Positions 39-154 of a stretch of DNA of 64,000 nucleotides are shown here, piece after piece (positions within the stretch are counted from its first letter, which is position 1; each line of letters starts with the position of its first letter). The notes under the pieces are model-generated. The model was not told the origin of the DNA. It saw nothing but the letters and a program-made list of their open reading frames with translations, and did no database searches. The translations under genes and the position numbers were made by a program. The DNA lies in the sequence record LR756502.1. The stretch is one strand, 5' to 3'.

Positions 39-154
39 GGCCTTTTCGTCTAGTGGTTCTTCCTTGTGAAGATACATTGATAGTCTTTGACTTCCAGTGT
101 AAGGACGGGTGTCTTTTCAGACACAGAACAGCGGTTCGACCCCGTTAAAGGCTA
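39..154 (+). tRNA. tRNA-Glu-like gene with ~43-nt D-loop insertion and 8-nt anticodon loop (CTTTTCAG)
   Basis: Acceptor GGCCTTT(39-45)/AAAGGCT(147-153), T-arm AGCGG-TTCGACC-CCGTT and D-stem GTC/GAC nearly identical to the tRNA at 1101-1173; extra 59-101 lies between TAGTGGTT and AGGAC; no encoded CCA. Confidence 0.7.

What the first reader, a model, noticed from the sequence alone, without database searches (positions are those of the whole stretch)
39..154. tRNA with a structured 43-nt insertion in the D-loop
Seen: apart from the anticodon stem and a few loop bases, this gene matches the intact tRNA at 1101-1173, except that 59-101 is inserted between TAGTGGTT and AGGAC. The insert folds into two hairpins: TCTTC58-62/GAAGA68-72, and TACATTG73-79/CAGTGTA95-101 capped by AGTC-TTT-GACT. 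Known: bacterial tRNA introns are group I/II and large; short non-canonical-position introns are archaeal (BHB-spliced); intron-containing tRNAs have been noted in huge phages. Inference: either a small intron needing an endonuclease plus ligase (this window encodes two RNA ligases) or a retained D-arm extension with a non-translational role.
Basis: partly seen in the sequence, partly recalled or inferred. Interest (0 to 1): 0.65.

Follow-up and report, generated by a model that had tools for sequence, protein, structure and literature searches.

The report
Extended tRNA-like partner of GOLLD RNA
The "tRNA with an insert" is real and belongs to a previously undescribed family of tRNA-shaped RNAs, many carrying a conserved extra arm in the D-loop, that huge freshwater phages encode right beside the giant cage-forming GOLLD RNA, so it gives a new handle on what GOLLD does.

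Summary
Window 39-154 matches the tRNA-like gene at 1101-1173 (88% identical outside the insert) with 43 extra bases (59-101) in the D-loop, which fold as two hairpins. The window is huge phage LR756502.1.

Neither copy is a normal tRNA. Both derive from tRNA-Glu but have a 6-bp anticodon stem and a 6-nt loop, U-N-UUC-R.

I collected 103 distinct relatives from phage and metagenome contigs:
- The cloverleaf covaries strongly.
- 58 relatives carry an insert of 11-135 nt at the same D-loop site.
- Every insert folds as an end-closed hairpin, and the helices show compensatory changes.
- 64 of 102 loci with such units also hold GOLLD on the same strand, usually with one plain and one extended unit.
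- In the closest relative (L306) the insert is 88% identical while the tRNA body is 67%.

There is no bulge-helix-bulge motif, no splicing endonuclease, and no ribozyme or group I/II signature.

Best reading: a retained, selected D-loop expansion in a GOLLD-associated tRNA-like RNA, not an intron or pseudogene. Its function is inferred only, because no RNA data exist.

The parts
39..154 (+). Extended (E-type) tRNA-Glu-derived tRNA-like unit A. Acceptor 39-45/147-153, D-stem 48-51/103-106, anticodon stem 108-112/121-125, T-arm 130-146, discriminator A154.
   Evidence: Custom model R1 scores it 65.2 bits, E 3e-19, full length. ARAGORN and the Rfam tRNA model do not find it.
59..101 (+). 43-nt structured insertion in the D-loop, after G18 G19 U U and before A21. 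Hairpin 1 is 58-72 (UCUUC/GAAGA, loop CUUGU). Hairpin 2 is 73-101 (UACAUUG/CAGUGUA, inner AGUC-UUU-GACU).
   Evidence: Fold results. The same two-hairpin insert occurs in L306:6493-6607 with pair-preserving changes and a pair deleted on both sides. The insert is unchanged in a roughly 94%-identical strain contig.
113..120 (+). Non-canonical anticodon loop C-UUUUCA-G. C113 and G120 can pair, giving a 6-bp stem and the hexaloop UUUUCA.
   Evidence: Across the family, positions 32:38 are C-G, U-A, G-C or U-G and never unpairable.
155..684 (+). GOLLD 5' variable domain, including a poorly conserved linker at 155-254.
   Evidence: It is homologous to LR745206.1 from window 255 onward. It is 82% identical to L306. 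The literature describes GOLLD as a variable 5' domain plus a conserved 3' domain.
685..1091 (+). GOLLD conserved 3' domain.
   Evidence: Rfam RF02032, 275.3 bits against a gathering score of 150, E 1.9e-77, model positions 1-416.
1101..1173 (+). Plain (P-type) tRNA-like unit B. It has the same acceptor and T-stem as unit A and the anticodon loop C-UUUUCA-G at 1132-1139.
   Evidence: Rfam tRNA 52.8 bits. ARAGORN tRNA-???. R1 88.4 bits.
1178..1208 (+). Intrinsic terminator (AACCCACCGATCTGGTGGGTT followed by a T-run) that closes the unit A - GOLLD - unit B transcription unit.
   Evidence: L003 4178-4198 equals window 1178-1198. Two Bacteroidetes-type promoter motifs, TTTG-N17-21-TAnnTTTG, lie just upstream of the window at L003 2870-2900 and 2951-2982, which is window -130..-100 and -49..-18.

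Best explanation
Window 39-154 is a functional member of a phage-borne family of tRNA-Glu-derived, tRNA-shaped RNAs that accompany GOLLD RNA.

The family keeps everything needed for the tRNA L-shape: a 7-bp acceptor, a 4-bp D-stem, G18 G19, and a T-arm with the GUUCGAAU loop. It differs from tRNA in two ways. Its anticodon arm is a 6-bp stem capped by the hexaloop U-N-U-U-C-R. The D-loop position between residue 20 and A21 is an expansion site.

The 43-nt block is such an expansion. It is a two-hairpin arm retained in the mature RNA and projecting from the elbow, comparable to the long variable arm of class II tRNAs. It is not an intron.

The unit is transcribed from a Bacteroidetes-type promoter as one RNA: extended unit - GOLLD - plain unit - terminator.

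Inferred mechanism:
- Host RNase P and RNase Z recognise the tRNA-shaped modules.
- These cuts would set the GOLLD 5' end at 155 and its 3' end at about 1100.
- The released (or still tethered) tRNA-like RNAs then act through their two conserved surfaces, the UUC hexaloop and the D-loop arm, as partners or cargo of the GOLLD cage or as ligands of a tRNA-binding protein.

Shown: the family, its structure, the selection on the insert, and the linkage to GOLLD. Inferred: retention in the mature RNA, RNase P/Z processing, and the downstream role.
For: 1. Family and fold. 26 aligned members give 96% paired cells, and 15 of 21 pairs change on both sides. The covariation score is 0.654 against 0.170 in shuffles (0 of 500 reach it), and slid controls pair at 29-48%.

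2. The insert is common and sits at one site. Of 103 distinct units, 58 carry 11-135 extra nt at the same D-loop position.

3. The inserts are structured. All 58 fold as end-closed hairpins, with mean z -2.5 and 95% below -1. In the 28-nt two-hairpin class 100% of cells are paired, 5 of 10 insert pairs change on both sides, and 0 of 500 shuffles reach this. The larger inserts are nested expansions of the tip of hairpin 2.

4. The window's own insert is under selection.
- L306 carries the same insert at 88% identity, while the tRNA body is 67% and GOLLD 75-82%.
- Its changes keep the pairs (C-G to U.G, U.G to C-G), and one A-U pair is deleted on both sides.
- A sediment-metagenome contig with 39 substitutions and 8 indels over window 1-818 has no listed difference before position 193.

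5. Linkage to GOLLD.
- An HMM of the GOLLD 3' domain hits 64 of 102 unit-bearing loci, although those loci were found with a pattern holding no GOLLD letters.
- Units directly abut GOLLD on the same strand.
- Recurrent layouts are P-E-GOLLD, GOLLD-P-E and E-GOLLD-P.

6. One transcription unit. Promoter motifs occur 3 times against 0.35 expected, and a terminator follows unit B.

7. Nothing supports splicing. No EndA was found while the controls were positive, no ribozyme or intron family matched at E<=10, and both hairpin bases sit flush at the junctions, so there is no bulge-helix-bulge.
Against: - No transcript data exist. No RNA run holds the stretch, so retention of the insert and RNase P/Z cleavage remain untested.
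- A pure processing role does not explain the strict conservation of the U-N-UUC-R loop.
- Some units occur without GOLLD. LR756504.1 has 9 units, one with a 112-nt insert, and no detectable GOLLD, although the GOLLD search found no candidates there and rang in no control genome. Another 39 distinct units lie in loci without GOLLD, many of them short contigs.
- Many GOLLD loci have a unit at only one end, so two-sided excision cannot be general.
- Conserved structure would also be expected of an intron recognised by a protein, and the phage does encode RNA ligases.
Confidence: 0.6

Rival explanations
1. The unit is a decoding, aminoacylated tRNA-Glu variant. The D-loop arm is tolerated or used as an identity element for a phage synthetase. 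The enlarged loop gives it a special translational property, such as four-base (GAA-N) reading, or resistance to a host anticodon nuclease. A more speculative version is that a wobble-excising nuclease plus phage Rnl1 activates it by restoring a 7-nt CUUUCAG loop.
For: - The UUC-R core of the loop is invariant. Only the base 5' of it varies (U, A or C), which is the expected pattern if UUC is still read as an anticodon.
- The same one-extra-base design appears in Tyr-like class II genes with GUA.
- GluRS identity features U11-A24 and U13.G22 are kept.
- The phages encode two GluRS/GlnRS-family enzymes, one about 10 kb upstream of this locus.
- A T4 Rnl1-type tRNA repair ligase is in the window.
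- A few members in other phages have G1-C72 and an encoded CCA (L041, L193).
Against: - Positions 32:38 covary as a Watson-Crick pair, which leaves a 6-nt loop that is not known to decode.
- The phage already has canonical tRNA-Glu(UUC) and tRNA-Glu(CUC).
- The window-type units have G1.U72, G2-C71 and A73, not the bacterial tRNA-Glu set.
- Tight linkage to a non-coding RNA is not expected of an ordinary isoacceptor.
- No frameshift sites or nuclease gene were examined.
Confidence: 0.2
2. The 43 nt are a small intron. An unknown endonuclease that recognises the hairpins cuts them out, and one of the phage RNA ligases rejoins the ends, giving a plain-type RNA.
For: - Removing the insert would leave a normal-length D-loop.
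- Insert length varies from 11 to 135 nt, as intron lengths do.
- RNA ligases of the Rnl1 and Rnl2 types and a 2H phosphoesterase are encoded in the window.
Against: - There is no bulge-helix-bulge motif.
- No tRNA-intron endonuclease was found in three huge phages, with positive archaeal controls.
- No group I/II or ribozyme match was found, and 43 nt is far below self-splicing size.
- The insert sequence is more conserved than the surrounding exons.
- Operons keep a plain and an extended unit as separate, differently placed paralogues with different typical acceptor and loop sequences. That would be pointless if both matured to the same product.
- Large inserts grow by nested expansion of one hairpin tip, as expansion segments do.
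Confidence: 0.12
3. It is a decaying duplicate (pseudo-tRNA), or a recombination scar left by insertion of the GOLLD cassette between direct repeats.
For: - The two units are direct repeats flanking GOLLD.
- In LR745206.1 the flanking copies are 100% identical.
- Standard tRNA finders miss 39-154.
Against: - Compensatory changes keep every helix.
- The insert is conserved across divergent relatives and strains.
- In LR745206.1 the identity stops exactly at the unit borders.
- The arrangement recurs in dozens of independent contigs.
Confidence: 0.02

Closest known systems
tRNA genes next to or inside GOLLD RNA (tRNA-Met beside env-38 GOLLD; tRNA-Phe embedded in Mycolicibacterium GOLLD)
   Same: A tRNA-shaped gene directly abuts GOLLD on the same strand. 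In my own set of 120 GOLLD loci, tRNA-Met sits at the same offsets: about 930 nt before, or 124 nt after, the conserved GGAGUGGU motif. The literature notes tRNA islands, linker tRNAs and 'covalently linked tRNAs'.
   Different: Those are ordinary tRNAs. Here the partner is a dedicated non-canonical family with a hexaloop and G1.U72. It often has a structured D-loop arm and usually comes as a plain plus extended pair. I found no description of this in the searchable literature.
Archaeal (and red-algal) tRNA introns at non-canonical positions, spliced at a bulge-helix-bulge motif by EndA
   Same: A short insert of variable length interrupts a tRNA gene in the D-loop region.
   Different: There is no BHB geometry and no EndA in the phages. 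The hosts are bacterial (Bacteroidetes). The insert helices covary along their whole length, and the insert sequence is more conserved than the exons.
Long variable arm of class II tRNAs (Leu, Ser, bacterial Tyr) and rRNA expansion segments
   Same: A retained hairpin grows out of a loop at the tRNA elbow or core without disturbing the L-shape. Its length varies and it grows by nested extension.
   Different: The site is the D-loop (20/21), not the variable loop (44-48). I know of no natural tRNA class with a helical D-loop arm. That statement rests on my own knowledge and was not tested.
tRNA-like processing signals (MALAT1 mascRNA, mitochondrial tRNA punctuation, the bacterial tRNA-flanked rRNA operon logic)
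   Same: tRNA-shaped modules flank a large non-coding RNA within one transcript, at positions where RNase P and RNase Z cuts would define its ends.
   Different: Cleavage has not been shown here. The strongly conserved anticodon hexaloop and D-loop arm imply a role beyond being a cleavage handle.
Natural tRNAs with 8-nt anticodon loops (yeast mitochondrial tRNA-Thr1; frameshift suppressors such as SufJ and sufD)
   Same: There is one extra nucleotide in the anticodon loop, on the 5' side of the anticodon.
   Different: In this family positions 32 and 38 covary as a Watson-Crick pair, so the loop is effectively 6 nt. Decoding has not been tested.

Membership tests
Canonical tRNA (Rfam RF00005 / ARAGORN) | Detected by the curated tRNA covariance model at the gathering score | tested here: not met
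   39-154 gets no RF00005 match, even at E<=10, and no ARAGORN call. Unit B at 1101-1173 does pass, with 52.8 bits against a gathering score of 29.
Canonical tRNA (Rfam RF00005 / ARAGORN) | Cloverleaf helices (7-bp acceptor, 4-bp D-stem, 5-bp anticodon stem, 5-bp T-stem) supported by covariation, with elbow residues G18 G19 and T54-C56 | tested here: met
   96% of cells paired, 15 of 21 pairs with changes on both sides, 0 of 500 shuffles as high. GG and GTTCGA are invariant in alignment A5.
Canonical tRNA (Rfam RF00005 / ARAGORN) | 7-nt anticodon loop with U33 and a purine at 37 | tested here: not met
   The loop is C-UUUUCA-G, which is 8 nt, or 6 nt with a 32:38 pair. ARAGORN reports a 2-base 'anticodon'.
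Canonical tRNA (Rfam RF00005 / ARAGORN) | Aminoacylation and use on the ribosome | not testable with these tools
   No biochemical or RNA data are available.
BHB-spliced (archaeal-type) tRNA intron | Bulge-helix-bulge (3-nt bulge, 4-bp helix, 3-nt bulge) spanning both splice sites | tested here: not met
   Predicted structures place both junctions flush at the bases of the hairpins. The multiloop has 6, 0 and 1 unpaired nt.
BHB-spliced (archaeal-type) tRNA intron | A splicing endonuclease (EndA, PF01974) available in the system | tested here: not met
   There are 0 matches in LR756502.1, LR745206.1 and LR756504.1, while the control rings in 4 archaea. The host genome was not searched. Bacteroidetes are not known to have EndA, which is my own knowledge.
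Group I / group II self-splicing tRNA intron or small self-cleaving ribozyme | Catalytic core recognisable by Rfam, with a size of 200 nt or more for group I/II | tested here: not met
   No such family matched in window 1-1300 at E<=10. The insert is 43 nt.
GOLLD RNA (RF02032), for the neighbouring element | Match to the conserved 3' domain above the gathering score | tested here: met
   275.3 bits against 150, full model 1-416, at window 685-1091. The same result holds in relatives.
GOLLD-associated odd-loop tRNA-like family (defined here) | Glu-type D-arm UCGUCUA..GG..AGGAC, hexaloop U-N-UUC-R closed by a 32:38 pair, G1.U72/A73, same-strand adjacency to GOLLD | tested here: met
   R1 scores are 65.2 bits (39-154) and 88.4 bits (1101-1173). 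All listed features are present in both units. GOLLD lies between them.
tRNA pseudogene | Loss of pairing and lack of conservation in relatives | tested here: not met
   All helices are intact. The insert and body are conserved, with compensatory changes.

The most novel reading that the evidence does not exclude
The plain and D-loop-extended tRNA-like RNAs may be the dedicated clients or adaptors of the GOLLD nanocage. On this reading GOLLD operons encode an RNA cage together with tRNA-shaped RNAs whose UUC hexaloop and D-loop arm dock on the cage, are stored in it, or capture a host tRNA-binding factor such as GluRS or an anticodon nuclease.

A sharper variant is that the extra loop base makes them 'spare' tRNAs, which a wobble-excising host nuclease plus the phage Rnl1 ligase convert into a normal 7-nt-loop tRNA-Glu.

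Either version would be a new kind of RNA-only host-takeover or counter-defence device, and the first functional clue for GOLLD.
Probability: 0.12. Interest if true: 0.92.

Novelty: new variant of a known kind. Interest (0 to 1): 0.72.

Why it matters
GOLLD is one of the largest bacterial and phage non-coding RNAs. It is now known to form a 10- to 14-mer cage, but it has no known function.

- **A testable partner for GOLLD.** A large clade of GOLLD operons carries dedicated, strongly selected tRNA-shaped RNAs, one plain and one with an extra D-loop arm. This gives a concrete partner to test by co-folding, cryo-EM of the full transcript, pull-downs and processing assays.
- **A new tRNA expansion site.** The D-loop between residue 20 and A21 can host a helical arm of 11 to 135 nt under purifying selection. 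As far as I know, this has not been reported for tRNA-like RNAs.
- **An annotation gap.** Standard tRNA finders miss these genes or label them 'undetermined', so they are invisible in current phage annotations.

Tried and rejected
- **Rfam at permissive threshold** on window 1-1300. Only GOLLD and unit B were real. The U6, rimP and SpF41 matches are sub-threshold chance hits that overlap the tRNA and the terminator.
- **Splicing endonuclease** PF01974 in three huge phages: none found.
- **Expression data:** no RNA run holds the stretch. Laying four DNA runs gave strain variation only and no joint across 59-101, as expected for DNA. The one joint, at 684/825, is a divergent GOLLD linker in another organism.
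- **Bacterial genomes**. Of 12 pattern matches, only 3 (all Planctomycetota) are real units by the R1 model. The rest are chance matches.
- **GOLLD-first sampling.** Of 120 viral GOLLD loci found by a GOLLD motif, the 100 searched with R1 had no odd-loop unit next to GOLLD, and ARAGORN on all 120 found only tRNA-Met or nothing there. The association therefore holds for one GOLLD clade, not for all GOLLD.
- **MAFFT alignment** of insert-bearing and plain units misplaced the 5' halves. I replaced it with a model-guided alignment.
- **FemAB lead.** ORF 1737-2228 gives a weak FemAB hit (E 9e-5, below the cut-off). NCBIfam does not back it, and PHROGs gives only an unknown-function family. I did not use it.
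- **Possible kissing interaction.** The hairpin-1 loop CUUGU is complementary to ACAAG in the GOLLD linker, but 5 nt is too short to distinguish from chance. I did not pursue it.
- **Literature searches** for GOLLD plus tRNA-like, D-loop inserts in huge-phage tRNAs, and phage tRNAs with enlarged anticodon loops found no prior description. One paper on GOLLD in mycobacterial tRNA arrays (PMC7549688) is not held.

Full report
**What is at 39-154**

Window 39-58 and 102-154 align with 1101-1173, with 9 mismatches in 73 positions. A 43-nt block (59-101) lies between TAGTGGTT and AGGAC. Seven of the mismatches fall in the anticodon stem and are largely compensatory (GUGU/ACAC versus AUAU/AUAU).

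RNAfold returns a cloverleaf with two hairpins in the D-loop, at -36.7 kcal/mol (z -2.67). The insert alone gives -11.4 kcal/mol (z -2.9). ARAGORN and the Rfam tRNA model find only the copy at 1101-1173. ARAGORN labels it tRNA-??? because the anticodon loop is not 7 nt.

- Rfam places a GOLLD RNA 3' domain at 685-1091 (275 bits, gathering score 150, E 2e-77). The stretch 155-684 is its variable 5' domain.
- An intrinsic terminator follows unit B at 1178-1208.
- Two Bacteroidetes-type promoter motifs (TTTG-N17-21-TAnnTTTG) lie just upstream of the window, 3 matches against 0.35 expected by chance.
- The window is LR756502.1, a 642-kb uncultured phage. The huge phages above 634 kb, all in the 'Mahaphage' clade, were predicted to infect Bacteroidetes (PMC7162821).
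- The locus therefore reads: promoter - extended unit A - GOLLD - plain unit B - terminator.

**A family, not a one-off**

Related huge phages and viral contigs carry the same units beside GOLLD. In LR745206.1 the units on both sides of GOLLD have a 22-nt D-loop hairpin, and a third unit has a 16-nt hairpin.

Three collection scans used patterns anchored on the 3' half of the unit, so they were blind to insert length and contained no GOLLD letters.
- They gave 27 viral loci, of which about half are true units.
- They gave 90 metagenome loci.
- They gave only 3 true hits among 185,579 bacterial species, all Planctomycetota.

In total I extracted 103 distinct units: 45 plain (73-77 nt) and 58 with 11-135 extra nt, always between G18 G19 N and A21.

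A covariance model built only from 14 plain units scores window 39-154 at 65.2 bits (E 3e-19, full length) and 1101-1173 at 88.4 bits.

**The tRNA fold is under selection**

On 26 aligned members, 96% of cells are paired and 15 of 21 pairs change on both sides. The covariation score is 0.654 against 0.170 for shuffles (0 of 500 as high), and slid controls pair at 29-48%. G18 G19 and the GUUCGA T-loop are invariant. A pseudogene reading is excluded.

**The anticodon arm is non-canonical**

- All members have an 8-nt loop N-U-N-U-U-C-R-N. The first and last bases are C-G in most, U-A in seven, G-C in one and U.G in one, and never unpairable. The non-C-G cases were not constrained by the scan pattern. 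The arm is therefore best read as a 6-bp stem with a hexaloop U-N-UUC-R.
- The D-arm (UCGUCUA..GG..AGGAC, with U11-A24 and U13.G22) is of tRNA-Glu type. However, the window-type units have G1.U72 and A73 and no encoded CCA.
- The phage also carries about 50 ordinary tRNAs, including tRNA-Glu(UUC) and tRNA-Glu(CUC).
- Tyr-like class II genes in relatives show the same design, with one extra base after U33 and a 32:38 pair.

**The insert is a selected structure**

- All 58 distinct inserts fold as hairpins closed at their ends, with mean z -2.5 and 95% below -1.
- In the commonest class, a 28-nt insert made of a 3-bp hairpin (usually with a GNRA loop) plus a 7-bp hairpin, 100% of cells are paired. 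Five of the 10 insert pairs change on both sides, and 0 of 500 shuffles reach this.
- Inserts of 87-137 nt keep hairpin 1 and the base of hairpin 2 and expand its tip.

The window's insert has the same two-hairpin layout. Its closest relative, L306:6493-6607, sits in a syntenic locus: unit - tRNA-Met - GOLLD - plain unit - terminator - MgtC gene.
- Hairpin 1 is identical there.
- Hairpin 2 differs by two pair-preserving changes and by loss of one A-U pair on both strands.
- Insert identity is 88%, against 67% for the tRNA body and 75-82% for GOLLD.
- A sediment contig with 39 substitutions and 8 indels over window 1-818 shows no listed difference before position 193.

**Linkage to GOLLD**

An HMM of the GOLLD 3' domain hits 64 of 102 unit-bearing loci, always on the unit's strand. 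Units abut GOLLD directly.
- The unit nearest the GOLLD 5' end is usually extended, and a plain unit often lies just upstream of it.
- The first unit 3' of GOLLD is usually plain (10 plain, 4 extended), and the second is usually extended (14 extended, 1 plain).
- The dominant layouts are P-E-GOLLD and GOLLD-P-E. The window and L306 are E-GOLLD-P.

Plain and extended units also differ in their typical acceptor and loop sequences, so they are distinct conserved paralogues.

The converse does not hold.
- 100 GOLLD loci sampled by a GOLLD motif have tRNA-Met or nothing at these positions.
- LR756504.1 has nine units, one with a 112-nt insert, and no detectable GOLLD. That GOLLD search found no candidates in the record and rang in no control genome, so the absence is weakly supported.

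**Intron or retained arm**

Nothing positive supports splicing.
- The junctions sit flush at the hairpin bases, so there is no bulge-helix-bulge.
- No EndA is encoded in three huge phages, with positive archaeal controls.
- No ribozyme or group I/II family matched at E<=10.

The window does encode a T4 Rnl1-like ligase (57690-58961), a second RNA ligase (51609-52250) and a 2H phosphoesterase (39773-40312). This is the usual phage tRNA-repair set, and it lies about 50 kb away.

Three observations fit a retained expansion arm better than an intron: sequence conservation above that of the 'exons', nested growth, and the maintained plain-plus-extended pair. No RNA data exist, so retention is inferred and not shown.

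**Mechanism and comparison with known systems**

The adjacency of tRNA-shaped modules to both ends of GOLLD within one transcript suggests that RNase P and RNase Z define the GOLLD ends at 155 and about 1100. This resembles tRNA punctuation or MALAT1/mascRNA, but it is inferred.

That role alone does not explain the invariant UUC-R hexaloop or the conserved arm. These point to a further role as ligands, for the cage or for a tRNA-binding protein. The phages encode two GluRS/GlnRS-family enzymes each, so charging remains possible.

Association of GOLLD with tRNAs is already known. A dedicated odd-loop family with a D-loop arm was not found in the searchable literature. I rate it a new variant of a known kind.

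Noticed in passing
window 113-120 and 1132-1139; L001:911-998; L202 about 250-335: Both window units have an anticodon arm of 6 bp plus the hexaloop U-N-UUC-R (an '8-nt loop'). Tyr-like class II tRNA genes in related phages use the same design around GUA (G-UUGUAA-C, G-UAGUAA-C). It looks like a systematic feature of these phages.
   Followed up: partly
LR756502.1 388572-388674, 401725-401887, 422753-422822, 373661-373929, 389161-389245 (loci L005, L008, L009, L017): The same phage carries other aberrant tRNA genes. 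One is a 103-nt gene with about 35 extra nt in the anticodon arm. Two are 79-nt genes with odd D-arms. One has a 6-nt loop, AUUGGA. Several Lys/'Glu'/Gln-type genes have long variable arms.
   Followed up: no
L001:2461-2544; L202:1554-1632; L306:7791-7880; L039 about 4465-4545 (-): A conserved, hairpin-rich spacer of about 80 nt follows the first unit 3' of GOLLD. It contains UCGUAGUGGUUAAC, which resembles a D-arm. It may be another small RNA or a degenerate tRNA-like element.
   Followed up: no
L002 about 2276-2345; L171 (LR756504.1 about 402.6 kb): Unit clusters in LR756504.1, which has no GOLLD, are preceded by a conserved leader of about 65 nt whose ends pair (GGAAGUUU...AAACUUCC). Spacers between the units are also hairpin-rich.
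   Followed up: no
window 1266-1733 and 1737-2228: An MgtC-family gene and a 163-aa ORF (phrog_6660; weak sub-threshold FemAB-like hit, E 9e-5) follow the terminator. The MgtC gene is syntenic in L306. FemAB enzymes use aminoacyl-tRNA, but the hit is too weak to build on.
   Followed up: partly
window 39773-40312 (-), 51609-52250 (+), 54163-54750 (-), 57690-58961 (+), 58945-59742 (+): An RNA-repair style gene set: a 2H phosphoesterase, an RNA ligase (PF09414), an HD-domain protein, a T4 Rnl1-like ligase with its C-terminal tRNA-specificity domain, and an overlapping ORF of unknown function (phrog_12810).
   Followed up: partly
window 2611-32223 (+): A roughly 30-kb block of sugar-nucleotide and glycan biosynthesis genes (epimerases/dehydratases, DegT aminotransferases, many glycosyltransferases, methyltransferases). 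It also includes a ClpB-like AAA+ ATPase (6544-8667) and an NAD synthase (21629-22390).
   Followed up: no
window 48830-50428 (-) and 60282-62165 (+): The phage encodes a DnaJ, GrpE and DnaK (Hsp70) chaperone set. It also encodes the RNR small subunit (41980-42942), a gp32-like ssDNA-binding protein (37069-38031) and a lysozyme (55926-56687).
   Followed up: no
LR756502.1 408572-409579 and 423446-424375; LR745206.1 23461-24189 (-): Each huge phage has two GluRS/GlnRS-family genes. LR745206.1 and G001 also have a truncated paralogue of about 300 aa, the size of GluQ-RS, which glutamylates a tRNA anticodon-loop base.
   Followed up: no
L096 (3' flank of GOLLD); L058/L113: Other GOLLD loci are followed by unusual tRNA-like elements. 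In L096 it is an acceptor/T-arm minihelix. In L058/L113 it is a divergent tRNA-Met-like gene that ARAGORN misses.
   Followed up: no
L206:352-425, L209:7340-7413 (-), L212:3609-3682: The only cellular genomes with the odd-loop unit are three Planctomycetota (a Novipirellula, a Pirellulaceae MAG and a Planctomycetota MAG). Their units are plain and have G1.U72/A73. Whether they are in a prophage was not checked.
   Followed up: no
window 63-67 versus about 764-768: The loop CUUGU of insert hairpin 1 is complementary to ACAAG in the A-rich GOLLD linker (AUCUACAAGC). L306 has both sequences, while relatives with other inserts have ACAAC, ACAAA or ACAGC there. With only 5 nt, this may be chance.
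   Followed up: no
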